Below are positions 4,779-59,062 of a DNA stretch of 64,000 nt, piece by piece. The number at the start of each line of letters is the position of its first letter. The stretch's first letter is position 1. A program made the position numbers and the translations under genes. The DNA comes from Haliotis cracherodii (taxonomy: Eukaryota), in NCBI RefSeq assembly GCF_022045235.1, contig NW_027266268.1, positions 12,028,001-12,092,000 on the forward strand, written 5' to 3'. The notes under the pieces are model-generated. The model searched no databases. It was not told the origin of the DNA and saw only the letters and a list, made by a program, of their open reading frames with translations.

Positions 4779-7079
<2,301 letters not shown>

Positions 7080-7245: not shown

Positions 7246-8074
7246 TTGAGCTAAATCACCACATAATCTCAAAATTAACTGCATTGTAATAGAAGGGTAT
7301 CTCGTCATGTTGCGCTCACTTGAAGACAATTTCTGATATCCTTGTTGAGATATTATAATAGGTCCTACAAGCCTATCAACATGGATATGTAGACTCAATT
7401 TAACAGTGATGAAGTAATATCATTATACATTCTACATGCATTTTATGGTTATCGAATTTGAAACGTGGTATGAAACCAAAGATGACAAGACTACATGTAA
7501 TAACCTCTCATAACGTGATGTTTGTTTGACGGAAATTTACTTTGTTGGTTGTCTCGAAACCCGGATAATTCGAATCTCTTTCCTGGTCCCTATGAGTGCG
7601 ACACAACGAGGTTCCACTGAATGTGTTATCAAGTGCCGACAGAGATAGGGGCAGAACCATTGTACATTTGCGTTTAGTCTGAATAATTGATAAAAGGATA
7701 TATAAGAAATATAAAAGAACAAGAAATAAACATCTAATGCGAAATCGGATTACACGACAACAAAGGAAGAACATGTCGCGGATTTAAAAGACAAAAGGCT
7801 AAATAAATTAGAAATATAACTTAGAAGACAAAATACGAAATGATAGCTGTGTGTGTAAGGATTTGTTTCGATAATGCACTGATCCATAAACAGCGGGTTG
7901 AAAGAATGGGATTCGCCTAATATACGGATGGAGAGTAACAAGCTTGAAACATATCATCCGATTTATTTTGCCCATACTACTATCCCTTACTTTTTTTAAT
8001 AAAAGTAAAAGTAGGGACGTTTTTCCATATCACAGTCCATCATGGGAGCAAATACAGCGACAGCAAGGGTTTTG

Positions 8075-8900
8075 CAGGGCGGGGATAGGCGGATGTGGGG
8101 ATAGAGGGATGGTGGGGCATAGGGCATCGAGATAGAGTTGGGGCAGGGATAAAGTGTGCCGGGGATAGAGGGATGCTGGGGCATAGAGGGATGCTGGGGA
8201 TAGGGCATAAAGATGGAGCTCGGGCAGGGATAGAGTCTGCCGGGGATAGAGGGATGCTGGGGCATAGGGCTCAAAGATAGAGCTGGGGCAGGGATAGAGT
8301 GTGCAGGGGATAGAGGGATGCTGGGGCATAGGGCATAGAGATAGAGCTGGGGCAGGGATAAAGTGTGCCGGGGATAGAGGGATGCTGGGGCATAGGGCAT
8401 AGAGATAGAGCTCAGGCGGGGATAGAGTGTGTCGGGGATAGAGGGATGCCGGGGCATAGGGCATAGAGATAGAGCTGGGGCAGGGATAGAGTGTGTCGGG
8501 AATAGAGGGATGCCGGGGTATAGGGCATAGAGATAGAGCTGGGGCAGGGATAGAGTCTGACAGGGATAGAGTGTGTCGGGGATAGAGGAATGCCGGGGCA
8601 TAGAGATAGAGCTGGGGCAGGGATAGAGTGTGCAGGGGATAGAGGGATGCCGGGGCATAGGGCATAGAGATAGAGCTGGGGCAGGGATAAAGTCTGCCGG
8701 GGATAGAGGGATGCCGGGGCATAGGGCATAGAGATAGAGCTGGGGCAGGGATAGAGTGTGTCGGGGATAGAGGGATGCCGGGGCATAGGGCATAGAGATA
8801 GAGCTGGGGCAGGGATAAAGTCTGCCGGGGATAGAGGGATGCCGGGGCATAAGGCATAGAGATAGAGCTGGGGCAGGGATAGAGTGTGTCGGGGATAGAG
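8075..8900. repeat. G-rich minisatellite, unit about 64 bp, about 13 copies
   Basis: Repeats of gggatagagtgtgtcggggatagagggatgccggggcatagggcatagagatagagctggggca with partial units. Confidence 0.95.
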
Positions 8901-10297: not shown

Positions 10298-12487
<2,190 letters not shown>

Positions 12488-14005: not shown

Positions 14006-14579
14006 TGTCGCAGAATGGAGATAACAAGCTACGCGTTCGGTTTGAAATTCAATTTATCGAGGTTATATCTACAGCAAACCCAGTTCTGCTTTGAAAACAC
14101 AGTATCTCCTAAATATGACTGTAAATTAATGCTTTGCCCGGGCATGTGCATAAAAGGAGGTATTGTCAAAAAGGCTTGAAAGAATTTTGACCTGATCTGG
14201 GCGAGGATGGGTCAAGCCGATGGTCCGGGTTTGGTGCCCCATTTGGATACGGAATGTGTGAAGGGAATTTCCTGTGTCCGCTGCCATGGTATTCAACGAA
14301 TATTGCTGAATGCGGCGTATAACAGAACTCACTCACTCGTCTTATCACGTCGGTGATAATATTTCTACTCGTGTATGTACGTTTTCCTGTGTTATAGATG
14401 CTACTGTCTCTTCGGTAATGGGCCAGTTTCAATTCCAATTGTATTGTAGCTGGGAGCATACTATTCAAGATACATGCTAGGCATACAGAAGTATTGAGGA
14501 GCCTGGTAGAGGGGATAGCAATAGTAGGTTTTGAGGGAGACATGGAAAGAGGGGATGGGATAGACATGAACAGTATAAA

Positions 14580-15460
14580 AGGGGCAAGGGAGGCGCGCGG
14601 GGGGGATGGGGGGAGGGGGGGTGGGGGGAGGGGGGGAGGAGAGTGGATGAAGTGGTGGATGAGGAGTAGGGTTATGAGGAGGCAGAGCAGGCCGCGGAAT
14701 AGAACCTGAATGAGGATAGGGAAACAGAGGTTGAGGAGTGGAGGCTGGGTAACAGTATTTAGTCGAGGCCGGGAGACAGAATTTAGTGGAGGCAAGGAAA
14801 CGGGTTGAGTTGAGGCAAGGAAACAGCATAGGTGAAGACTGGTAGACTGGGTTGAGTGGAGGTTGGGTAACAGGATTAAGTCGAGGCCGGGAAACAGAAT
14901 TTAGTGGAGGCAAGGAAACGGGTTGAGTTGAGGCAAGGGAACAGCGTGCGTGAAGACTGGTAGACTGGGTTGAGTTGAAGTTGGGAAGCTGGTTGAGTGG
15001 TGGTTGAGAAACAGGGTTTAATGGAGGTTGGGAAACTGGTTGAGTGGAGGATGAGAAACAGGGTTTATTAGAGGTTGTGAAACTGGTTGAGTGGTCGTTG
15101 AGAAACAGGGTTTAATGGAGGTTTGGAAACTGGTTGAGTGGAGGTTGAGAAACAGGGCTTAATGGAGGTTGGGAAACTGGTTGAGTGGAGGATGAGAAAC
15201 AGGGTTTAATGGAGGTTGGGAAACTGGTTGAGTGGAGGTTGAGAAACAGGGTTTAATGGAGGTTGGGAAACTGGTTGAGTGGAGGTTGAGAAACTGGGTT
15301 TAATGGAGGTTGGGAAACTGGTTGAGTGGAGGATGAGAAACAGGGTTTAATGGAGGCTGGGAAACTAGTTGAGTGGAGGATGAGAAACAGGGTTTAATAG
15401 ACGCTGGGAAACAGGGGTTGAGTAAAGCAAGAAAGCACGAGTTGAGTGGAGGCAGGGAAA
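14580..15460. repeat. G-run tract followed by a minisatellite (about 47-bp unit built from two 23-24 bp subunits)
   Basis: Repeated gggtttaatggaggttgggaaactggttgagtggaggttgagaaaca, degenerate at the edges; poly-G tract at 14581-14640. Confidence 0.9.
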
Positions 15461-18653: not shown

Positions 18654-21078
<2,425 letters not shown>

Positions 21079-25495: not shown

Positions 25496-27975
<2,480 letters not shown>

Positions 27976-31860: not shown

Positions 31861-32005
31861 NNNNNNNNNNNNNNNNNNNNNNNNNNNNNNNNNNNNNNNN
31901 NNNNNNNNNNNNNNNNNNNNNNNNNNNNNNNNNNNNNNNNNNNNNNNNNNNNNNNNNNNNNNNNNNNNNNNNNNNNNNNNNNNNNNNNNNNNNNNNNNNN
32001 NNNNN
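31861..32005. other. Assembly gap
   Basis: Run of N. Confidence 1.
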
Positions 32006-33019: not shown

Positions 33020-35535
<2,516 letters not shown>

Positions 35536-38147: not shown

Positions 38148-38294
38148 NNNNNNNNNNNNNNNNNNNNNNNNNNNNNNNNNNNNNNNNNNNNNNNNNNNNN
38201 NNNNNNNNNNNNNNNNNNNNNNNNNNNNNNNNNNNNNNNNNNNNNNNNNNNNNNNNNNNNNNNNNNNNNNNNNNNNNNNNNNNNNNNNNNNNNN
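38148..38294. other. Assembly gap
   Basis: Run of N. Confidence 1.
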
Positions 38295-40050: not shown

Positions 40051-43436
<3,386 letters not shown>

Positions 43437-47998: not shown

Positions 47999-50900
47999 CT
48001 ACAAAAGTAAGACTGTGCAGAATGCAAGGACAACCGTTGACACAAGAGCGTCAACAGATGCTGTTCCACCAGTGTGAGTTGGGAAGCCACCGTTGTCGTC
48101 GTCCTTCTTGCATGAGCAGGATCCAAGGGCAGCTACAAATTTGGTTGTTTTGAGATCTGGGTTTCGGGACCTCAAGGTCAACAGATAGTCTTGTATTACG
48201 CCCTTGGCAAGACAAGGATGCTTCTCGGCCTCAGCAATAGCTGCAGGACATTCCTGGCGACATCCACCGAAGGGATTACAGTTGTCCAACACCTGAAAAA
48301 TAAAACGTCTCTAATGCAACAAGTCAATGTCTTTAGTACTCCAAAGAGGAATAACTTCCGTAGTAAAGTTTCTAAGGAGAAATCATTTCATTTTCAGTTG
48401 GTAGTGTGGGGTAATTATTGTTGGAGTTCATCATTTTTAATGTAGTGTCCAACAGGATCAAAATGTGTTCAATTTTGTTTTTTTCTTAATGTAACCAACT
48501 GCATTCTCTAGACACGTAAAGATAATGTGCAAAAAGGGCACATTATTACTTTTTCTACAATAAGAGATACATGCAAGTTTATTCAGTAATTCACATGTTG
48601 GATCTTGAACACACTCCCGTCTCCCCATTCCCTCCTGGAATTCAATGGATGCTCCCCAAGTTTGCAGCGGACCTTTTGATTCAACTTGAAATTAATTAGT
48701 AATAAAAATTACTTTCAGATTATTTGGGTCTTTGACGATCTTTACTGATTTTATACATGCATGCATCAGTAGGAATAATTCCTGACGGCAGAATATTCAT
48801 TATTACCAACAATACTTGATTAATTTTCATGTTTCTGATCAAGTGAAGGTAATGAGTTCTAAAACCAATCGTATAATTTTGAATATTGCGTAATTTATTG
48901 TTGTTGATGTCATACGTTATGTTGTGAATAGTTGCGTATAACATTAAACCAAACCGGTACATGTTGTAGTTTTAGCTTTAGATGCATATGTTCAGTCTAG
49001 GCAGTTGATGCAGGAAGTGTGCAGATGATTATTGTTGGTGGCAGCAGATTGAAACGCACGTAAAATGTTCTGATGACCTATTGTGAAACTTCCACGTGAG
49101 CTCGCTAATAAGAGTGACATTCCTCAGTCCAAGTTCCACCTTCGTTATCTTCCCGGTATAGAGAGTTCATCAGTGAGGAGCTTGTTTCAAACATTCATTC
49201 ACTTCCGACATACTCCTTCATTTGAGATGCCTCGCGAGGTAACAGTTTCTAGAAGGCTGACTGTACACAAGAGCGAGACGAGGCATATTCGAGGCCGTCT
49301 ATAACTAGACTTGCAATTGCAACATATCTACTTGCCCTGTGTGGAAAGGATACCTTTCGAAAAGCCTCAACTCTTTTGGCAGCTTCCAACACTATTTCCT
49401 CGATTCAAGAACGAGGCACAAGCCTCATGCTAGGCGTTCGACTGTGGCAAGTTCTGAACATTCATGCGTGAACTGACATATGTGATAAGGCCGATTATAT
49501 ATTGCCGTTGCCACATTTCTGAACCACTGTATTGTCTTTTATAACTGTAATCCTAATCCGGTTTCAATATAAGTTGTTGGTTGTTCACTTATCTTCCGTG
49601 TTTATTTATTGATTTCACAATATAGTTCTGTACGTACCGTTCTGAGTTAGCCTTCGCTTTTAAACTTTGTGTTCAAGTCGTATCAACGTTGAACGAAATG
49701 TCTTTCTGACAAATTAAGTATTTTCTTCCAGTTCAAGTACATTTTAACATACCAAGACATTACAACTGAAACAAAGTATGACTAGCCTCCTCAGTTCATG
49801 TTTAATAAGTGAAAACTTTTCAATGAGCAGAGCTCAGTGTTCGATTCCGACTCGACTATGGTCATGTATTTATGAATCACTATTAAAAAAGTGATGAAAT
49901 TGGTGGTTCGCGAAAGTGTGGGCGTATCCTGCCATACCGGTGGCATCTTCCACAAACACACGCAAAGACAAGTTAGCAGTTCATCTGCGAAAACACGGGA
50001 ACATATTGTACAAGTCAAAATATGGAATTGCAATTTTGATGCGTCATATTTGGAAATGTTCTCCACAAGTCTACCATAAGATTTAAACAACAGAACTGCA
50101 GCTCTGCAACAAAGGGCAATTCCTTGAAGTTGTTATCATTAGTACGGGCTGAATGAACTTGTACATCACCATACCTCAGGTCTCAATACGAGCTCACAAA
50201 TGGCAAAGACATATATTTGGTGAATTTCTTGTGCCCGCCACTGGACTTTCAGTGAGGTAATGTTGACGTGACAATTTTGCAAGGAAGTGACGTTACGTCA
50301 ACATTATAACGTTATGATATACGAATAGGCCAACTTGCATGGGTTTCACCAGACGGCGACTGGCCGGACATTCTTACCCTTTTCGCGAACACCTGGCATC
50401 ATCACTGATTTGTGATCCATTCATATAATTTCTATTACCATTTTGCCTTCTTCGCCAAATGGAATCGTTTCGGCAGATAACTGAGACTTATTTTTCTCTG
50501 GCGTTGATGATTTGAATGTGTTTTATTAAGACATATGTGGCTGTTTGGTGAGTTATATAGCTTACCTTGTCCATAACCATTTTAGTGTCAGGGTGTGAGT
50601 TGTTGAAGAACTCGGCAATCCTACAACCCATTATTGCTCCCCCTTCTACATCACAGTTGTTGATGGTCTTCCAAGTAACACAATTGCTATTGCTGCTGGC
50701 CCTTTTGGGGTAGTAAGTGAAGGTGCCATAACACATCTCGTTACTTATGGAAAAACCGTAGAAGGTGGTCTTTGTAGCAGACAGAGATTGGTATACACAA
50801 GTCGTCTTCAAGGAATCGCCACGGCGAATAGCCACTGGCGGATCATACCTGTGGGATAGAAAGTGGATTGCGGCATTTTCTTTTCGTCGAATAGATGAAT

Positions 50901-53900
50901 GAAAACGTTAGTGAGTATACAAAATGAAATCCTACATTTAAACTACGAACTTCGGTGGACTTTCCTTATATCTACAAGTCAAGGTTACGTGAGTGTATAT
51001 ATTTGAGGTGTCTTGTGCTAATGTCATCGAATAGTAATATCAGTCAATATGTCATACAAATACATGAACAACGAGTTATGAATAGCAAATACTGACCTTG
51101 GTAGCAGCTCCTATGACCCCCTACCTACGCTTAGGGTTTAACAACTACCGCCTGGCTCAGCCGTTATTATTTATAATACGTCAGGGAAAGCGAGGTTGCC
51201 AAGTTAACGAGGTTTTACTGTAGTTACTTCCCGAAATTAACGAGCGATAACGTTTGTTCAAATTCATGTTTCCCACATGTGTAACTACAATTCTGATAAT
51301 TGTTGAAGAGCCTTACGTCATGCTTTTTGGGTTGTCGTAGCTGTAGTTCAGCTGTTTAGTGAGATACTGCCTCTCGCCTCCACTGAAGAGTTCCACCGTC
51401 TGTGCTACACCTGGAGGAACAATATTCAAGGTAATATAAGGGTAACGATCTTTTTCAGGGCATTATCATTTGCAGAAGCCCGAGGTCTTCCATTAACTGC
51501 CCGACGAAGGAGGGCATTTGAAAGACTGAGGGCTTCTACAAATGAAGAGAAAAAGAGCGTTACCGTTATTATAGCTAAAATGTTTGGAATTTGTTATCAA
51601 ATACAAAGAAACAACAATATCGGTTTTGAAACATTCACTGCAATCAACACAAATGTCACTGACCCACTTTACAAACATGGAAACGTCATAGAACAAACCA
51701 GATGACGTCTCTTTTGAACATGACGTCACCTATCCCTACCCCAAGACCGTCGTCAAGCAATATGCGGGCATTATCAAGTTACAGTGGCCCGCTTATTTCT
51801 GATAACACGCGGGCGGTTGAATGACAATTCTATCCATTTTAGCTATAAATTCAGTTATGATATATATGAATATAAAAAGTCAAAGCCAAATGATAGTCAG
51901 TCTCTCAATGATTATCTGCCGAAACAGATTCCATCAGGCGTAAAAAGCAATAGTGGTGAAACTCAGTGACGACACTAGGTGTTCGCAGAAGGGGAAAGCG
52001 GTACAGGGAAATACGACTCCTACGACCACAAGGCTTTGTTCAGCCCATGCACAAACCATGTGACATTAGCTGATATGTGGTGCTATCAAACATAATCAAG
52101 GTGAATCATGGAATCGAAACAACAGATCGGTGGCCTATGCAACACGGGGAACAACGAATGGCTGTCCCTCCTGCATGAATAACTTACCTCTGTAATGCAT
52201 ATGGTTGAATCCCCCTATGATATATATGGTGTCGCTCAGGATCTTGTTTGTGCAGCGTGCGGGACACATGGATTCGACCACGGTCCTGCTCCGTCCAGGC
52301 GGGATAACAAGGTTGGTTTCTCCTGTCCAAAATAGTCCCGCGTCGTTGGGGCGAAGGTTGGACGTGTAGTAGATGCTAAGGCCAGAACCATCCATCTTGC
52401 CAGCTGTTTTTTCAGGGTTGTTCCAGTGAAACTGAAGCAAAAACACATACGTAAAATGAGATATCCAATATAACAGGGCGGTGGGGTAGCCTAGTTGTTA
52501 AAGCATTCGCTGGTCACGACGAAGGGTGTCCCCCGGCGTGATATTGCTGGAAATTACAAAAGGCGTCGTAAAACCATACCTGCACGCTCACTCCAATGTA
52601 GTATGACGTCTATGCCGTTACGTAACCAGACAACAGAGTAACTAGTGGGTGATAGCATGAACACCAATCCATGCCATTTTGGTACGATGGTCTCACATTG
52701 TCCCAACCCATTGTTCACTTGTCGGTTGTTCTCTATGACAACAAGTCGGTGTTGGGCATTCTAATTTCCTAAAAACCCAAAGGGTGCTTACAGCTTTCAT
52801 ATGTGTTCCTTTGATTTTTTGCGCCTCAGTTGTTAATGGCAATGAGGTGAGGTGATGGGAAATAAGGTTTGAAGTCGCCTTCATGTTTATTGCACTTATA
52901 TAGCGACTGATCCGGACATAACCTGGTCCGGGTTTACCCGGTTAAAAGTGCACTGATCCACGAGATGACTTCCCACTCCTACACAGTACACTTACTCCGA
53001 GCCGATCAGTCCTTGTTTTATCCTCTTAGTGCCGAGCGCCAGGCAGGTAACTTTTTTTGGTGACGCGGCCGTCCAAGATGCGAACTTGTACGCATAACAA
53101 TATGATAGTTTCTTAAACAACTCTTTTCCAGAGAAGGGAATAAAGATAACGAACAGCAGATATTGTTGGGTACGGGGAATTCATTGCCGTATACCGTATT
53201 GACATTTAATAGACTATTCCCGATTGTAAGTTATTTTGCGATTCATGGATCTCATTTGGAGCCAAACGGACTGTAAATGACAGTGAGTTTATGATGATAA
53301 CCTACTGACGATCATTGACTGACGTTCAGGGTGCACATCTGAGAAGGGATATCGGTCGAGTTATATTCTTCTCCACGTTATAACTATTCCGGATCATACA
53401 GCTGGCTCACCAATCATGGGTTTTATGCACAAGGCTACCACACCGCATCTAGACCGGGGAGATGGCTAATAGTAGATATCAACTACATGAATACTCTTAC
53501 AAGTACCCGGCGGGGATTCCGGGTTAGTATTTATATGTCTGTCATACGAGGCGACCAAATGGATCGGGTGGTCAGGCCTGGTGTCCCACTATGTTCCGAC
53601 GTTGCACATAATATCCATCTCTGGTTTAACTGGTTCAGACTCGATGACGTACAGGCCGCCGTCATATAGCTTGGAAAATATATAGCGTTAAACAACAAAC
53701 TCAAACTCTTAGATGTTAACCGGAATGAGTAGAAATGGTTTCACTTGCATAATTACGTTATGAATAAGAGTAGGCCGCCTCCGTGGTCTAGGGGCAGAGC
53801 GTTCGCCCTGAGGGGGGAAGGTTTGGGGTTCGATCTCCGGCCGCGTCGTACCAAAAGACGTTAAAAGATGGTACTTGTTGTTACCCTGTCTGGCACTCGG

Positions 53901-55424
53901 CATTAAGGGGCTAAAACAAGGACTGGTCGGCTCGGAGTCAGTATACTGTCTGAGTGTCTGAGTGGGGTATTCATGTTAAACTGCGGCATAGTATCTCAGT
54001 ATGCTAGTACTATAGATCGGCATCAGTNNNNNNNNNNNNNNNNNNNNNNNNNNNNNNNNNNNNNNNNNNNNNNNNNNNNNNNNNNNNNNNNNNNNNNNNN
54101 NNNNNNNNNNNNNNNNNNNNNNNNNNNNNNNNNNNNNNNNNNNNNNNNNNNNNNNNNNNNNNNNNNNNNNAAAGTGCAATAAAAACCAATTTCACCTCAC
54201 CTCACCTATGAATAAGAGTAAGTATTTTGTGTACCTGAAGGAGAACCCTCTTGTAGCCAGTTTTGCCAATTCTAAAGCCAGCTTCTTTATGGAGACACTG
54301 ACCAGGCATACCAACCGTCCAGAACCCAATGCCTTCCTGGCATGCAGGCATAGACTGTCCGCACTCTTGTGGACTTGTGATCACAGGCGCTGCAAGGACG
54401 GAAACTATACATATGAACCCAACTTGATACGGGTATTTTGTTTACTAGCTTCAAAACTTGTCCAAGTGGTACATAATTCAGCATTTGTCAGATATCATTT
54501 GTGGATAAAGTGAAACCATTACTGTCCATGTGCAATCCCCTAAACCTTCAGCAGGTATTTTGATACGCGTAAGAGATCGAGCAGCGGATTACGGCGACTT
54601 TGACGGTTGCCTCCAACACCTCCTCAAGAGGACTATAATTGGATATTTGTGTATGAAACTTCCAATTTGGAATTTTACTGCTCGGGAAGAGCAATAAGTA
54701 CCGGTACCCCTTGTCAAGACGGGCGATACACAAGTTCACTCAGTCGTCACAGAATTACACGCCAGTCGTATTTAACATTTTATATGTATTACTGGGCATA
54801 AATATATAAAGAAAATTATTTGGTAAAACGGGAATAAATAGTTTAAAATCATTAATATTTACCATTATCACCACATCCGTAAAGTATGATATGGTGCACG
54901 ACGTTAACGTTGTCTATTTCCGGTTCTGTGGCAATCAGGTGGTAATCCTGTGATTGGTCCAGGTCAAAGGTCATGCACATATAAGTGGTTTCCTTGTCAG
55001 GTACTGCTGTTCGTGGAATCTTCATAATCTGTTTTTGGACTCCTGCAAGGGGAAAAGGATTATGCAAACGCAAAGGCTAGAATTTCATAATCCTCCTCCT
55101 CTTCTCCCTATTATGTTCTGTCTGTATCTCTCTGTCGCTCTCTTCTCTCACACATACTCTTTCTGTCTCTCTCCCTCTCTGTGTCTCTCTCCCTCTCACT
55201 GTGGGATGTTCTGTGACAATATATTATCAAGTACCTGTTTCTGTAGTTGCTGTACAGTTGAATTTAGAACACTCTCTTCTCTCACACACACTCTTTCAGC
55301 CTCACTCCCTCTCTCTGTCTCTCTGTCTCTCTCTCTCTGGGATGTTCTGTGACAATATCTTATCACGTACCTGTTTCTGTAGTTGCTGTACAGTTGAATT
55401 TAGAACACTCTCTTCTCTCACACA

Positions 55425-55492
<68 letters not shown>

Positions 55493-58221
55493 GCTGGAAT
55501 ATTGCTAAAAGCGCCGTAAAACCATACTCACTCACTCACTCTCTCTCTGGGATGTTCTGTGAAAATATGTTATCACGTACCTGTTTCTGTAGTTCCTGTA
55601 CAGTTGAATTTAGAACTTGTACACGGAGCTGTGATGAGTCCAGCACACGTCTGACTTGAAGAGGTATCACAAAAACCTGAAATGAATTCTCTGGTCAATA
55701 CATGACGCTCGTTATAAATTATCATTTCTAAATTTTGACGTATATTAGATGTTATACTTTCTGGAGGACAGCCCACAACAGCATCCAAGCCCAGCGTGAC
55801 CTGAACATGCACTGTCTCAAAATCACTTGATTGTCTGATCCAGACTCGATTGTTTACAGGTCGAGACGCCATCATGAATATTGTCGACTGCAGCTTTAAT
55901 CAACAAACAAACAAATAATAACATAGGAATATGTGTACGTATGGTCACCACAACATAAATATATTCTTGGATATCGATAGTTTCATTTATCTATGCTTTC
56001 CACAAATGTAAACGAGATCCTACCATGGGTATATCGCGTCAAGTATATTCCTCGAGTAGTGGTTCCTAAAACGATATCCCTCATGTTCATTTGATTAGTG
56101 TCAGAGTATTAATTTCACAATAACAAGATCCGGGGTAGAAAAGATCTTCAGCAACCCATGCTTTCCGTAAAAGGCGACTATACTTGTTGTAAAAGGCGAC
56201 TGACGGGATCGGATGGTCAGGCTCGCTGACTTGGTTGATGCATGTCATCGATCCCAATTGCGTGGATCGATGCTCATGATGTCAATCCCTGGATTGTCAT
56301 GTCCAGACTCGGTTATTTACAGACCGCCGTCATATAGCTGGAATATTGCTGAGTGCGGCGTTAAACAACAAACAAACAAACACAATAACAAAATAGAGTT
56401 TTCTTGGTTCCTTGGACTGTGATAGCAGGCCTTGGCGAAGATTACAACTAAACATACACAATGTAGCAAGATAACTGTCATCAACAACGTTATTTTGGGA
56501 TAACATATTGTTTGGATATACAGTATGTTAATTAGAAAAATGTTCTGAGTGGCGAATGACTAGATTGTTATCTAACCACTGATCAGGATAAATCGCTACT
56601 GAAAGAAGTTTTAGCCTGATTGAATTTTTACCAACAAAGAGACCACCTCTGTGGTCTAGTGGTTAAAGCGTTGACCTGAGAGTGGAAGGTCGGTGGTTCG
56701 ATATCACTACCTCACCCATAGAAACCAAGAGAAGTCTACTATCACGTTTCATTGTACATGAGTACCTACCTGGGTGTGTATAATATATATTGTTATCGAA
56801 CCACTGATCAGTTTAAATTGGGTAAACTGTTAGAAGAAAAACCGAACTGTGTTATAACCGTCAGAGATGAATAAACACTAACAAAGAGAGCCCAGACTCC
56901 TATCAAGTTCCATCGTTGTACCTACCTGGGTGTGTGAGTCCAGTTGTCCTTGCGGGCGTGGCTCCTCTTGTCCACATGCACTGTGGGTCACCCAGCTCTT
57001 GACCATTGGTCATCCCATCACCATCAGAGTCCATATTACACACATTCGCCCACTGTGTGGCCAGGAAAGTGTTTGATTAAAAAATGTTTGCGAATATGTT
57101 GGCATTGATGGTCTAATCGTCTAAATCATGGCAAATTGCCAAGTAGGGTTGGGTCCCGTAGGAGTAGCATGATCCGATGATCGTGAGTTCGAAGGCTAAA
57201 TGCCTGATAATGATCCTTTCGTTAGTTGTTACGTACATTTTATCCGTCTTTTTCCCCACAAGCTGACGTGCCGTAATATAAATCAATTCCTGTTCAAAGC
57301 GGTGTTAAAAACAAGTCACTCACTCTCTTACGTTACGTCTGTTCGCGTTCGACCTCACCAGACAGACTTTATCGTTCACGTGAAAACATGAAGATGCAAA
57401 CAGTGATATAAAAATCAACACATGGGAACAAATGGGAAACGCGGAGCAATGTATATCGGGAAATGATCATGAATATCAACATTCACAGGTTAGTGTGTTC
57501 AGCGTTCATGCTCTCGTTAACACTTTATCTTACAAAAAAATCCTCAGTTATATATTCTCACCGTTCTGCCCTGGTTTGCAAAATCAATGCCGAACTGATT
57601 TGTGTCACCTCCACCCCCGGGATTCAGATGCCCCACCCCATGCCACAGCTCCCCCGTCACACAAGGGTTGGGCAGGGTGTAGCCATTGGGTATCATGTCC
57701 CTGTACCCGCTATGGCCATAGATCACCCCAATGCATGTGAAGAAAGCGGCAAATCTGGACAAACATAAACAGGAACTTAACTTAAATGGTTCACAAGTAC
57801 AGTACAGTGTAGCAGCATTGATAGCATGAAACTTATTGTTACGAATGCTTTGAAACCTTCCAACACAGATCAGCTGGGCCCCGTTCCAAAAAGCGATCTT
57901 AGCGCTACGAGTATCGTAAGCCAGTGTTAAAGTAAGGGAGTTATGATCACCTATGCGCTAAGATAGCTTTGTGAAACGGGGCTCAGGTGTTGTTCTGAAA
58001 CAAACTATCTCTTACAACCGTTTAAGGAAAAGTAAACACGACGAGAGGTTTCGCTTCGTAAAACCCGCTATTGACACATGTACCTCATATTATCGATATA
58101 ATACATCACCTACCGATACGAAACTCATATCGCGGGACATGGTATCGCGATATGTGATTATCGTGCTTGCAAGGTTATAAAATGTCCAAACGGTCATTCT
58201 CGCCTACCTTACGGTAAACAT
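47999..58221 (-). CDS. Temptin-domain copper type II ascorbate-dependent monooxygenase (DBH/TBH/MOXD1-like), 559 aa; exons 58221-58208, 57754-57562, 57052-56926, 55676-55581, 55042-54863, 54389-54235, 52431-52188, 51410-51317, 50848-50566, 48292-47999
   Basis: Ten GT-AG-bounded exons sum to 1680 nt with matching phases. Signal peptide MFTVRFAAFFTCIGVIYG. Temptin motifs IPNG..PNPC..WHGVGH..GGG..NQFGIDF and CNMDSDGDGMTNGQELGDPQCMW. Copper-ligand motifs VVHH, QFHW, NHMH and NEMC. Hydrophobic C-terminus. The 14-nt first exon is the least certain. Confidence 0.88.
53772..54206 (+). mobile_element. SINE family E ((CACCT)n tail; central part resembles the Meta domain from memory), spans an N gap; copies near 28145-28405, 44800-45060 (-), 52840-53070 (-), 56642-56705, 58540-58815 (-)
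   Basis: tRNA-like head (gtggtctag..ggttcgatctcc), gtcgtaccaaaagacgttaaaagatggtacttgttg..ggcattaag, tail ttcacctcacctcacc. Confidence 0.72.
54028..54170. other. Assembly gap
   Basis: Run of N inside a family E SINE. Confidence 1.
55201..55616. repeat. Three tandem copies of an ~70-bp unit (3' end of monooxygenase exon 4 plus its donor site) separated by (CT)n
   Basis: gggatgttctgtga..tatca(a/c)gtacctgtttctgtagtt(g/c)ctgtacagttgaatttagaac near 55203, 55339 and 55549. Confidence 0.92.
56127..56380 (+). mobile_element. SINE-like family B; further copies near 3820-4040, 16100-16290, 22310-22540, 40650-40880, 53500-53705, 60936-61172, 62800-62995
   Basis: 11-bp target-site duplication cacaataacaa (56116-56126 and 56381-56391). 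Confidence 0.88.
57874..57986. mobile_element. Small palindromic MITE (Harbinger-like ends) in monooxygenase intron 1
   Basis: ctgggccccgttccaaaaagcgatcttagcgc ... gcgctaagatagctttgtgaaacggggctcag. Confidence 0.7.
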
Positions 58222-59062
58222 GTTGATCAATGTCAAGCTATACCCGCAAGCTTTTCTGCCTTCTGTTGATGGTGCGATTGATTCTAAGGTTCACTCAATA
58301 TCAACACTGTATATATGAAATAGGAGCAACCTTTGAACTTATGTAGTGAATCCCAACTCTTATGCAAGCTCGATGACAGTGCAGTAAAAGTAGGTCAGGA
58401 TCTTTCAATGCAAATACGTTGTCAGGGTTTGGCTCAGCAGTGAATTTATAACAACACTTTCTCACATACCAAATAACAACCCAATCTTTTCACAGTTTGA
58501 AAGAGTCGATGACCTTGTATGCTGAATATTGCACCTGAATAGGCGAGGTGAGGTGCAATTGGGGTTTAACGTGACGTTCAGGTTTATTGCAATTATATAG
58601 CGACGTGCATTCATTTGTAAGCGTGGCTGCTTGCACTTGTCCGTGTAATGTTGATTTTGTAGTGCTAGCCCAATGAGATACATGAACCACTACCGCTGTT
58701 TGACATTGCTACCCCTCTCAGGCACAGTAAACTGACTCCGTGCCAACCTGTCTTTGTTTAACCCTCTTAATGCCGAACGCCAGACAGGGTAACAACAAGT
58801 ACCATATTTTAAGGTATTTTGGAAACTGGTGTATGGTTTCATTCAGAAATAAATTTTAAAAGACGCGATACCTGTTTATGTTTGAACTTGCCGTTAACTT
58901 AAAGATGTAGACGTGTTTAGTTGTACCAAGCAGGGAGTGCGTCTCTAACTAGATAAGTATCGCTTTAGATACATCTGCACGTTTCGTGTTCTTTCAGCTC
59001 GTGCTGGTAATGGACGCACGCTGCACGTCCTGCTGAACACAGCCGCTCACAGACACCAAAAA

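What the first reader, a model, noticed from the sequence alone, without database searches (positions are those of the whole stretch)
47999..58221. Temptin domain fused to an intact DBH-type copper monooxygenase with a GPI-like tail
Seen: ten exons join into one frame encoding signal peptide, temptin domain, Cys-rich linker, both monooxygenase subdomains with all six expected copper ligands (HH, H in QFHW, HMH, M in NEMC), a Cys-rich domain, and a polar spacer with a terminal hydrophobic run and no cytosolic tail. Known: temptin was described as a small secreted protein of the Aplysia waterborne pheromone complex, and DBH/TBH/MOXD1 carry an N-terminal DOMON domain, which is absent here. Inference: a cell-surface copper hydroxylase in which temptin replaces DOMON, possibly making or degrading a chemical signal; free temptin could derive from such an enzyme. 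The architecture may already exist in mollusc annotations under DBH-like names, but I know of no characterised substrate.
Basis: partly seen in the sequence, partly recalled or inferred. Interest (0 to 1): 0.75.

Follow-up and report, generated by a model that had tools for sequence, protein, structure and literature searches.

The report
Temptin-copper monooxygenase gene, already described
This is a real, expressed abalone-type gene for a secreted copper hydroxylase that carries a temptin domain where its vertebrate relatives carry a DOMON domain, but this hybrid was described in 2009 and its substrate is still unknown.

Summary
Ten minus-strand exons (58221-47999) with AG/GT borders give a 559-codon frame. 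Pfam matches exon by exon, in order: Temptin_C, Cu2_monooxygen, Cu2_monoox_C, and no DOMON. All six copper ligands align to human DBH His262/263/333 and His412/414/Met487.

The N gap lies in intron 6. One spliced 1947-nt contig of run X1 joins exons 1 to 7 exactly as modelled.

The architecture is not new. Takahashi et al. 2009 (PMC2762978) described the temptin/mono-oxygenase hybrid. Hundreds of public proteins carry it under DBH-, TBH- or MOXD1-like names. Public protein P0302 is this gene's product minus 24 N-terminal residues.

This genome holds at least 22 such fused loci. The scan noted the paralogue 44 kb upstream before (s1-826231).

What this work adds:
- The public model lacks the signal peptide.
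- The hybrid also occurs in the sponge Sycon.
- The temptin domain is also fused to cytochrome b561 and ferric reductases, the same partners as DOMON.

Substrate and GPI anchoring remain inferred.

The parts
58208..58221 (-). Coding part of exon 1: ATG plus 11 nt (M F T V, first two bases of R). This is the start of the signal peptide. The 5' UTR continues upstream.
   Evidence: One search gives the frame and the GT donor; contig 1 of run X1 lies on 58208-58299 and then goes on at 57754; there is no in-frame ATG upstream before an in-frame TGA 24 codons up.
57562..57754 (-). Exon 2: the rest of the hydrophobic leader (FAAFFTCIGVIYG) and the first half of the temptin domain (YRDMIPNG, WHGVGH).
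   Evidence: Temptin_C 3-52 of 98, E 2.4e-12. X1 piece 57562-57754. IPNG and GH are invariant in all 13 aligned temptin domains.
56926..57052 (-). Exon 3: the second half of the temptin domain, with the DSDGDGMTNGQELGDP loop and the closing THPG.
   Evidence: Temptin_C 57-96, E 3.7e-16, and a weak TSP3_bac match. D53, D55, D57, G58, N61, E64, G66 and D67 are invariant in 149 sequences. X1 piece.
55581..55676 (-). Exon 4: a phase 1-1 linker exon with four conserved cysteines.
   Evidence: Searches show the four Cys columns conserved in 98 family members. X1 piece 55580-55674. No Pfam match.
54863..55042 (-). Exon 5: the start of the CuH domain, with the HH ligand pair.
   Evidence: Cu2_monooxygen 4-56, E 2.7e-12; the alignment to DBH and PHM. 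X1 piece.
54235..54389 (-). Exon 6: the rest of the CuH domain up to ...VLLQ.
   Evidence: Cu2_monooxygen 69-115. X1 and X5 pieces 54235-54389, joined directly to 52431.
54028..54170 (.). Assembly gap (N). It lies inside intron 6 and is not part of the transcript.
   Evidence: Its letters were neither filled nor looked up.
52188..52431 (-). Exon 7: FHW (the third CuH histidine), the start of the CuM domain, and the HMH ligand pair.
   Evidence: Cu2_monoox_C 2-55; the alignment to DBH 294-375; pieces 52300-52431.
51317..51410 (-). Exon 8: the middle of the CuM domain.
   Evidence: 100% identical to P0302 residues 314-343. Cu2_monoox_C runs unbroken over 261-401 of P0302.
50566..50848 (-). Exon 9: the end of the CuM domain with the Met ligand (NEMC), then a Cys-rich stretch.
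   Evidence: Cu2_monoox_C 94-145, E 1.9e-11. M aligns to DBH index 448, which is Met487.
47999..48292 (-). Exon 10: a Cys-rich helical C-terminal region with a CSC motif, a polar spacer, a 16-residue hydrophobic end and the stop codon.
   Evidence: helices at 421-494 of P0302, low confidence at 509-517, tail helix at 518-534; no significant match to any solved chain; hydrophobic score 2.55 at the very end.

Best explanation
The region holds one ten-exon gene that is transcribed and spliced as modelled.

What the product is. It belongs to the temptin/mono-oxygenase hybrid family, a clade of type II copper, ascorbate-dependent monooxygenases. In these proteins a roughly 100-residue disulfide-bonded temptin domain with an invariant DxDxDG-type acidic loop sits where DBH, TBH and MOXD1/2 carry DOMON. 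A hydrophobic leader sends the protein into the secretory pathway. A terminal hydrophobic run with no residues after it most likely acts as a GPI-attachment signal. The enzyme would then sit on the outer face of the cell or be shed into the extracellular matrix.

How it works. The mechanism is that of DBH and PHM. The CuH site (His, His, His) takes single electrons from ascorbate. The CuM site (His, His, Met) binds O2 and hydroxylates a C-H bond of the substrate.

Shown here: the gene model, the single transcript, the domain order, the absence of DOMON, the six ligands, the DBH/PHM fold, membership in a large conserved family, and a local expansion of that family.

Inferred: signal peptide cleavage, the GPI anchor, catalytic activity, and the site of action. 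For the site of action my best guess is mantle or shell-forming epithelium, because relatives are nacre-matrix and mantle-specific proteins. The substrate is unknown.
For: Gene model and frame.

Transcript: contig 1 of run X1 is 1947 nt long. It lies on 58208-58299, 57562-57754, 56924-57052, 55580-55674, 54863-55041, 54235-54389 and 52300-52431, at record positions 65-1048 without a break. DNA runs X15 and X16, under the same organism label, show unspliced contigs across the same borders.

Public protein: P0302 (535 aa) is 100% identical to E2 (from its residue 20) through E10, in order.

Domains. DOMON scan of the whole genome: 32 matches, none in the window and none beside a fused locus.

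Ligands. All six are kept in 91 of 98 full-length family members.

Fold: the AlphaFold2 model has pLDDT 93.0 and pTM 0.85. Foldseek finds DBH 4zel at E 8.9e-29 and PHM at about 1e-23. VIA-align gives DBH Z 27.3, PHM Z 26.8 and the next unrelated chain Z 8.1.

Tail: 63 of 98 family members end in a hydrophobic run with at most 6 residues after it. MOXD2 is a DOMON-type relative with a predicted GPI signal.

Family: 116 of the 120 listed rows, and all 120, carry PF24784, PF01082 and PF03712.

Matrix link: a 'tyramine beta-hydroxylase/temptin' protein is a major nacre protein of Haliotis laevigata. Temptin-like genes are among the most mantle-specific in Dreissena.
Against: No activity, copper content, substrate, tissue or localisation was measured.

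X1 is only guessed to be an RNA run. Its RNA nature rests on the spliced contig itself. Contigs cannot show expression level.

They rest on P0302 and on the contig length: 165 + 1666 + 116 = 1947.

The signal peptide and the GPI signal were judged by eye, without a predictor. 26 of 98 relatives have no hydrophobic tail and 9 have residues after it, so anchoring varies within the family.

The nacre and mantle proteins in the papers were not matched to this paralogue. Their sequences are in supplements that I could not open.
Confidence: 0.7

Rival explanations
1. It is the animal's tyramine or dopamine beta-hydroxylase, as the public name 'tyramine beta-hydroxylase-like' says, and makes octopamine or noradrenaline in neurons.
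For: NCBI names for P0302 and its relatives. The ligands and fold are those of DBH. E7 matches DBH but no PHM chain at E up to 1.
Against: The same genome has three classical loci with DOMON upstream of Cu2_monooxygen and Cu2_monoox_C (C5:7.27 Mb, C5:7.29-7.30 Mb, C19:1.46-1.52 Mb). These can fill the neurotransmitter role.

There are at least 22 fused loci, far more than a neurotransmitter pathway needs.

The 35 animal temptin-type cores sit on one side of a branch with SH-aLRT 97, apart from 12 DOMON-type cores (quick tree).

Relatives are found in nacre and mantle.
Confidence: 0.07
2. It is a non-catalytic extracellular matrix or adhesion protein that keeps the monooxygenase fold only as a scaffold.
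For: A relative is a bulk nacre protein. The family is large and diverges fast: paralogues are about 50% identical. The temptin domain of Aplysia is described as a protein-binding 'glue' (title cited).
Against: All six ligands are intact here, and in 91 of 98 relatives from sponge to mollusc. That is hard to explain without selection for copper binding.
Confidence: 0.12
3. It is a precursor that is cleaved to release free temptin as a waterborne signal.
For: The domain is the same as in Aplysia temptin. Free temptin is secreted by snails (passages).
Against: There is no dibasic or furin-like site between temptin and the linker. The linker has four conserved cysteines. A pTM of 0.85 suggests a fixed multi-domain body. 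About 10 temptin-only loci exist as separate genes.
Confidence: 0.05
4. The fusion is an artefact: two neighbouring genes or a mis-assembly across the N gap.
For: An assembly gap lies inside the locus.
Against: One contig joins exons 1 to 7, and the gap is intronic. 22 colinear loci exist in this genome. Hundreds of fused proteins occur in other species.
Confidence: 0.01

Closest known systems
[quoted passage not shown] 2009, PMC2762978)
   Same: The same architecture: an N-terminal temptin domain, then PF01082 and PF03712, and no DOMON (passages read).
   Different: Nothing in kind; this gene is a member. New relative to that paper: the hybrid is also in the sponge Sycon ciliatum, in a bryozoan, an annelid and a flatworm, and probably in protists. 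The paper found it only in Lophotrochozoa. This genome has at least 22 loci.
MOXD2 (monooxygenase DBH-like 2)
   Same: A signal peptide, a two-copper monooxygenase core, a C-terminal GPI signal and an unknown substrate (passages of PMC4125168).
   Different: MOXD2 has DOMON at the N-terminus; this protein has temptin. The temptin-type cores form their own group in the tree.
Human dopamine beta-hydroxylase (PDB 4zel)
   Same: The best structural and sequence match: six ligands aligned, Z 27.3, 304 residues aligned. A helical Cys-containing region follows the core. DBH has a dimerisation domain with Cys528 and Cys530, and this protein has a CSC motif.
   Different: There is no DOMON. The C-terminal region has no detectable sequence similarity to DBH, so the CxC parallel is by eye only. 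DBH is vesicular, while this protein has a GPI-like tail.
Peptidylglycine alpha-hydroxylating monooxygenase (PHM)
   Same: The same two-domain copper core (Z 26.8, 281 residues aligned).
   Different: After the Met ligand PHM reads MCNLY, whereas this protein reads MCYGT. By recall, PHM's substrate-binding residues are N316, Y318 and R240, and they are not matched here. E7 finds no PHM chain. The protein has no lyase domain.
Aplysia temptin (waterborne pheromone component)
   Same: The same domain (Pfam Temptin_C), with the conserved cysteines and the acidic loop.
   Different: Temptin is a small free protein. Here the domain is the N-terminal module of a 559-residue enzyme.
DOMON-cytochrome b561 proteins (CYBDOM) and DOMON ferric-chelate reductases
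   Same: The temptin domain appears in the same fusion partnerships as DOMON: a copper monooxygenase, cytochrome b561 and ferric reductase. CYBDOM was seen as a listing and abstract.
   Different: The folds and sizes differ. No cofactor is known for temptin. The window's own protein has no b561 part.

Membership tests
Type II copper, ascorbate-dependent monooxygenases (DBH/PHM superfamily) | Both Pfam domains, Cu2_monooxygen and Cu2_monoox_C, in order | tested here: met
   on P0302: E 7.5e-23 (residues 127-240) and E 3.3e-22 (residues 261-401), both above the curated cut-offs. The exon-by-exon scan agrees.
Type II copper, ascorbate-dependent monooxygenases (DBH/PHM superfamily) | CuH ligands (3 His) and CuM ligands (2 His + Met) | tested here: met
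   Searches align them to DBH His262, 263, 333, 412, 414 and Met487, which names as the ligands.
Type II copper, ascorbate-dependent monooxygenases (DBH/PHM superfamily) | Two-jelly-roll catalytic fold | tested here: met
   DBH Z 27.3 and PHM Z 26.8, against Z 8.1 for the next chain.
Type II copper, ascorbate-dependent monooxygenases (DBH/PHM superfamily) | Ascorbate- and O2-dependent hydroxylation | not testable with these tools
   Needs an enzyme assay.
DBH/TBH/MOXD1/MOXD2 subfamily | N-terminal DOMON domain | tested here: not met
   No PF03351 match on P0302. None in the window among 32 genome-wide DOMON matches at E up to 1. The 1947-nt transcript contig has no room for one.
Temptin/mono-oxygenase hybrid family | Temptin domain N-terminal to the monooxygenase core on one polypeptide | tested here: met
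Temptin/mono-oxygenase hybrid family | Groups with other temptin-type cores rather than with DOMON-type cores | tested here: met
   35 animal temptin-type rows lie on one side of a branch (SH-aLRT 97). Caveats: quick tree, 12 DOMON-type rows from 7 proteins, no PHM root, and one partial protist row fell on the other side.
GPI-anchored proteins | Cleavable N-terminal signal peptide | tested here: inconclusive
   The leader MFTVRFAAFFTCIGVIYG was read by eye. It aligns with the leaders of relatives. No predictor was run.
GPI-anchored proteins | C-terminal hydrophobic run at the very end, preceded by a polar spacer with small residues | tested here: met
   hydrophobic score 2.55 with 0 residues after the run; disordered at 509-517, then a helix at 518-534.
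GPI-anchored proteins | Omega-site prediction; release by PI-PLC | not testable with these tools
   No GPI predictor and no bench work.
Temptin (free pheromone protein) | Small secreted protein consisting of the temptin domain alone | tested here: not met
   The product has 559 residues, with the domain at 1-95 of P0302.

The most novel reading that the evidence does not exclude
Temptin is not at root a pheromone. It is an old extracellular accessory module of ascorbate- and cytochrome-b561-driven redox enzymes, and it is interchangeable with DOMON.

Evidence from domain partnerships. The temptin domain sits N-terminal to copper monooxygenases from sponge to mollusc. It also sits N-terminal to cytochrome b561 (P0360, P0363) and to ferric reductases (P0361, P0362). 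In one protist transcript (P0358) it is joined to a monooxygenase plus b561 in a single chain.

Evidence from conservation. Two histidines (in GH and in HPG) and the acidic loop are invariant in all 13 aligned domains across these contexts.

What would follow. If this is true, the domain binds a metal or relays electrons or substrate to the catalytic partner. The hybrid would predate bilaterians, and Aplysia's free temptin would be a derived offshoot.

Literature. No paper in the searched library holds both 'temptin' and 'b561' (0 papers).
Probability: 0.3. Interest if true: 0.6.

Novelty: already known. Interest (0 to 1): 0.3.

Why it matters
The gene itself is an annotated member of a family described in 2009, so the finding adds no new kind of thing. 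It still marks a real gap. This is a conserved and often greatly expanded family of apparently active extracellular copper hydroxylases, present in molluscs and other spiralians. No substrate is known for it. It is routinely mislabelled as neurotransmitter-synthesis enzymes, which can mislead pathway inference. One probable example is a Pinctada microarray study that filed 'temptin' unigenes under tyrosine metabolism. Relatives are found in nacre and mantle, which suggests a role in shell-matrix chemistry. The shared fusion partners of temptin and DOMON give a testable idea of what the temptin domain does.

Tried and rejected
Ideas and searches that led nowhere:

1. Histidine-brace idea. I asked whether the mature N-terminal His (G|HSGY) together with WHGVGH forms a copper site like that of LPMOs. 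I rejected this as a family feature: the residue after the leader is Tyr or Phe in most relatives, and His only here. The two invariant histidines (GH, HPG) remain unexplained.

2. Atlas search with exon 2 alone gave no usable hit. With residues 1-95 of P0302 it gave only temptin-domain clusters, one of them automatically named 'Ferric-chelate reductase'.

3. Exon 10 against solved chains gave nothing significant; the best hit was E 0.087, to designed proteins. The likeness of its CSC motif to the DBH dimerisation cysteines is therefore by eye only.

4. Cytochrome b561 scan of this genome gave 3 matches, none beside a temptin-only locus. The b561 fusions are therefore not seen in this animal.

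5. The wide structural search with the whole model barely tested residues 1-115 and 408-535. The fold of the temptin domain was not placed, and I had no stand-alone temptin protein to fold.

6. Other copies inside the window: a tblastn of the exon translations found only the gene itself.

7. Tree. It used 37 temptin-type proteins that I picked for taxonomic spread, out of about 178 full-length ones held. It also used all 12 cores of 7 DOMON-type proteins. It has no PHM outgroup and was built by the quick method. The partial MMETSP row (217 aa, long branch) fell on the DOMON side.

8. Paper searches. The word_start search for 'temptin' matched 'tempting' and the 'anywhere' search matched 'attempting'. 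Both were useless and were repeated as whole_word searches.

What I saw of each paper:
- Passages read by the find mode only: PMC2762978, PMC6003135, PMC4846438, PMC4125168, PMC9210306, PMC4445274, PMC8696127, PMC5824581, PMC11464482, PMC12665527, PMC5685644. For PMC3091767 only a reference-list entry matched.
- Listing and abstract only: the CYBDOM papers.
- Seen only as citations: Peng et al. 2021 and Cummins et al. 2004 and 2007.

Supplements are closed. The sequences of the H. laevigata nacre entry and the Dreissena temptin figures could show which paralogue is meant.
Full report
THE SEQUENCE. On the minus strand, ten exons run from 58221 to 47999. Their coordinates are 58221-58208, 57754-57562, 57052-56926, 55676-55581, 55042-54863, 54389-54235, 52431-52188, 51410-51317, 50848-50566 and 48292-47999. 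Every intron begins with GT and ends with AG. The phases fit, and the sum is 1680 nt, which is 559 codons and a stop. The ATG at 58221 is the first in its frame after an in-frame TGA 24 codons upstream.

DOMAINS, SEARCHED EXON BY EXON. Pfam matched, in order:
- Temptin_C on E2 (profile 3-52 of 98, E 2.4e-12) and on E3 (57-96, E 3.7e-16).
- Cu2_monooxygen on E5 (4-56 of 130, E 2.7e-12) and on E6 (69-115, E 4.2e-4).
- Cu2_monoox_C on E7 (2-55 of 157, E 2.5e-5) and on E9 (94-145, E 1.9e-11).
- E4, E8 and E10 matched nothing.

A tblastn of the exon translations against the window found no second copy there.

COPPER LIGANDS. Aligned to human DBH (4zel_A), the HH of E5 falls on chain indices 223/224. 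The H of FHW falls on 294, the HMH of E7 on 373/375, and the M of NEMC on 448. With the chain's offset of 39 these are His262, His263, His333, His412, His414 and Met487. The DBH structure paper names these as the CuH and CuM ligands (passages of PMC4846438). PHM aligns at the HH pair and at the Met as well. E7 found DBH but no PHM chain.

THE ASSEMBLY GAP. The Ns at 54028-54170 lie in intron 6, between 54235 and 52431. Three results show that nothing coding is hidden there:
- Transcript contigs pass from 54235 straight to 52431.
- In homologous proteins the matches to E6 and E7 abut.
- On the public protein, Cu2_monooxygen runs to profile position 129 and Cu2_monoox_C starts at position 2 twenty residues later.

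TRANSCRIPT. I searched for runs with exon 10 plus 149 nt downstream. 20 of the 24 listed runs hold part of it, in 7 studies, and none is on record as RNA. I laid four of them on 52300-58299.

In run X1, one contig of 1947 nt lies on 58208-58299, 57562-57754, 56924-57052, 55580-55674, 54863-55041, 54235-54389 and 52300-52431. Its record positions are 65-165, 166-358, 359-487, 488-582, 583-761, 762-916 and 917-1048, with no break. The offsets of one or two bases are the G or GT shared by an exon start and an intron start. Exons 1 to 7 are therefore joined exactly as modelled, with temptin and monooxygenase on one molecule.

The contig length fits the whole model: 165 + 1666 + 116 = 1947. That leaves no room for a DOMON exon.

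Run X5, under another organism label, has a contig that joins E6 to E7 and another that lies on E2. Runs X15 and X16 show unspliced contigs across exon borders, for example 56794-58299 and 54171-54936, so they are genomic DNA.

Limits: these are contigs, not reads. X1 is only guessed to be RNA.

PUBLIC RECORD OF THIS GENE. A full-length relative found with exon 9 served as a query and led to many relatives. One of them, P0302 (535 aa), is named by NCBI 'tyramine beta-hydroxylase-like [Haliotis cracherodii]'. It is 100% identical to E2 from residue 20 onward and to E3 through E10, in order.

The public model starts at the internal Met of YRDMIPNG. It therefore lacks the hydrophobic leader and the first residues of the temptin domain. 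So do the closest relatives: P0295 (83% identical) and P0294 (79% identical) both extend N-terminal of P0302's start, and P0295 begins with a similar leader ending ...GVIYG.

On P0302, Pfam gives Temptin_C at E 1e-31, Cu2_monooxygen at E 7.5e-23 and Cu2_monoox_C at E 3.3e-22, and no DOMON.

NO DOMON. A whole-genome scan with PF03351 at E up to 1 gave 32 matches. None lies in the window or next to a fused locus. Three classical loci serve as positive controls: DOMON lies upstream of the monooxygenase exons at C5:7.27 Mb, C5:7.29-7.30 Mb and C19:1.46-1.52 Mb.

A LARGE FAMILY IN THIS GENOME. Scans with the three families gave 59, 25 and 32 exon matches. I paired the coordinates by hand. 22 loci have two Temptin_C exons followed on the same strand by Cu2_monoox_C, and 19 of these also have a Cu2_monooxygen match. 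21 of the 22 are on contig C5 and one is on C4. They form clusters at 11.96-12.18 Mb (seven loci, this one included) and at 17.07-17.24 Mb (six loci). About 10 further loci have temptin exons only. These counts are lower bounds, and some copies may be pseudogenes.

My scans show temptin and both monooxygenase matches there, at C5:11976297-11984156.

ALREADY DESCRIBED. Takahashi et al. [quoted passage not shown] They noted that DBH-like enzymes carry DOMON in that position. They called this a 'Temptin/mono-oxygenase hybrid' and a lophotrochozoan synapomorphy.

In the protein collection, 116 of the 120 listed rows, and all 120, carry the three families. NCBI names them DBH-, TBH-, MOXD1- or PAM-like, and UniRef often names them 'Temptin'. 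The species include bivalves, gastropods, a chiton, Lingula, Macrostomum, Owenia and Watersipora.

Beyond the 2009 paper, the sponge Sycon ciliatum has at least three such NCBI proteins. Pfam was confirmed on P0251.

FAMILY FEATURES. I aligned 98 full-length members, chosen for a length of 500-640 aa, a starting Met and matches to E2, E3, E5, E7 and E9.
- 91 of the 98 keep all six ligands.
- The four linker cysteines are conserved.
- 63 end in a hydrophobic run with at most six residues after it, 9 have a run followed by more residues, and 26 have none.

In 149 sequences the acidic loop of temptin (D53, D55, D57, G58, N61, E64, G66, D67 of P0302) is invariant. Among DOMON-type relatives, MOXD2 is already known to have a signal peptide plus a GPI signal.

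STRUCTURE. The AlphaFold2 model of P0302, built with alignment A1, has pLDDT 93.0 and pTM 0.85. A low-confidence stretch at 509-517 precedes a terminal helix at 518-534. Foldseek finds DBH at E 8.9e-29 and PHM at about 1e-23. VIA-align gives DBH Z 27.3 (304 aligned), PHM Z 26.8 (281 aligned) and then Z 8.1. The temptin and C-terminal parts were barely tested by these searches.

TREE. A quick maximum-likelihood tree was built from 49 catalytic cores. It puts the 35 animal temptin-type rows on one side of a branch with SH-aLRT 97, apart from 12 DOMON-type cores. The window's protein sits with P0295 (support 100), inside a group made up of vetigastropod (Haliotis, Gigantopelta) and Patella proteins. 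One partial protist row fell on the DOMON side. There is no PHM root, so this shows a separate group, not the direction of the domain swap.

WHAT IT PROBABLY DOES. The protein is a secreted two-copper hydroxylase, most likely GPI-anchored, that works like DBH. The public names suggest neurotransmitter synthesis. Three things argue against that: the classical DOMON-type genes in the same genome, the 22 loci, and the separate clade.

The papers point to shell-forming tissue instead. [quoted passage not shown] Temptin-like genes are among the most mantle-specific genes of Dreissena. 'Temptin' unigenes were filed under tyrosine metabolism in Pinctada larvae; I infer that this is because they are such hybrids. 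None of these proteins was matched to this paralogue. The substrate is unknown.

A LEAD ON THE TEMPTIN DOMAIN. The search with the sponge protein also returned other architectures that carry the domain (Pfam confirmed):
- Temptin_C N-terminal to cytochrome b561 (P0360, P0363).
- Temptin_C N-terminal to ferric-reductase FAD and NAD domains (P0361, P0362).
- In a protist transcript (P0358, 781 aa), Temptin_C with both monooxygenase domains plus a b561 match that is just above the cut-off (23.3 against 23 bits).

These are the partners of DOMON: DBH, CYBDOM proteins and ferric-chelate reductases. IPNG, GH, the acidic loop and HPG are invariant in all 13 aligned domains across these contexts. No paper in the searched library holds both 'temptin' and 'b561'. 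The 6 papers that hold 'temptin' and 'reductase' do not, by their titles, concern domain architecture (listing only). In this genome no b561 match lies beside a temptin-only locus.

VERDICT. Its functional suggestions are untested, or, for the idea that free temptin derives from such an enzyme, not supported.

Noticed in passing
window 4779-43436: A tandem array of tubulin genes. Six near-identical last-exon ORFs ending ...[16 protein letters not shown] lie at 4779-5618 (-), 11669-12487, 20260-21078, 27157-27975, 34753-35535 and 42618-43436 (+), spaced about 7-8.6 kb apart. Pfam Tubulin_C (E 2e-44) and Tubulin (E 1.2e-36) were confirmed on the copy at 11060-12484. By recall, the acidic tail looks like that of beta-tubulin.
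   Followed up: partly
window 55138-55474 (intron 4): A 136-bp unit repeated 2.5 times (90% matches) beside a (CT)42 microsatellite. Each unit carries a copy of the last ~37 nt of exon 4 plus its GT donor. These are possible decoy donor sites; the X1 contig uses the first one.
   Followed up: partly
window 58208-58221 and 57697-57754 versus public protein P0302: The public protein model for this gene starts at an internal Met. It lacks the 24 N-terminal residues that form the signal peptide and the start of the temptin domain.
   Followed up: yes
window 7996-8857 (-) and 14166-14795 (-): Long proline- and serine-rich repetitive ORFs lie in stretches with strong GC skew (0.33 and 0.47 in the 2-kb windows at 8-10 kb and 14-16 kb). 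There is no Pfam match for 7999-8850. They are probably low-complexity repeats between the tubulin copies.
   Followed up: partly
window 53700-54099, 55500-55699, 56100-56499 (introns): Very high summed contig depth in all four runs, with many joints and loose ends, marks dispersed repeats inside introns 3, 4 and 6. The element that carries the motif ...GCAATATTCCAGC... recurs several times in the locus.
   Followed up: no
G000:C5:11.96-12.18 Mb and 17.07-17.24 Mb: Clusters of seven and six temptin-monooxygenase loci lie on one contig. At least 22 fused loci occur genome-wide, plus about 10 temptin-only loci on C80, C1 and C5.
   Followed up: partly
proteins P0358, P0360-P0363 (not in the window): The Temptin_C domain is fused to cytochrome b561, to ferric-reductase domains, and in one chain to a monooxygenase plus b561. 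The sources are unnamed metagenome and protist-transcriptome records.
   Followed up: partly
window 31861-32005 and 38148-38294: Two further assembly gaps lie inside the tubulin array. They were not examined.
   Followed up: no
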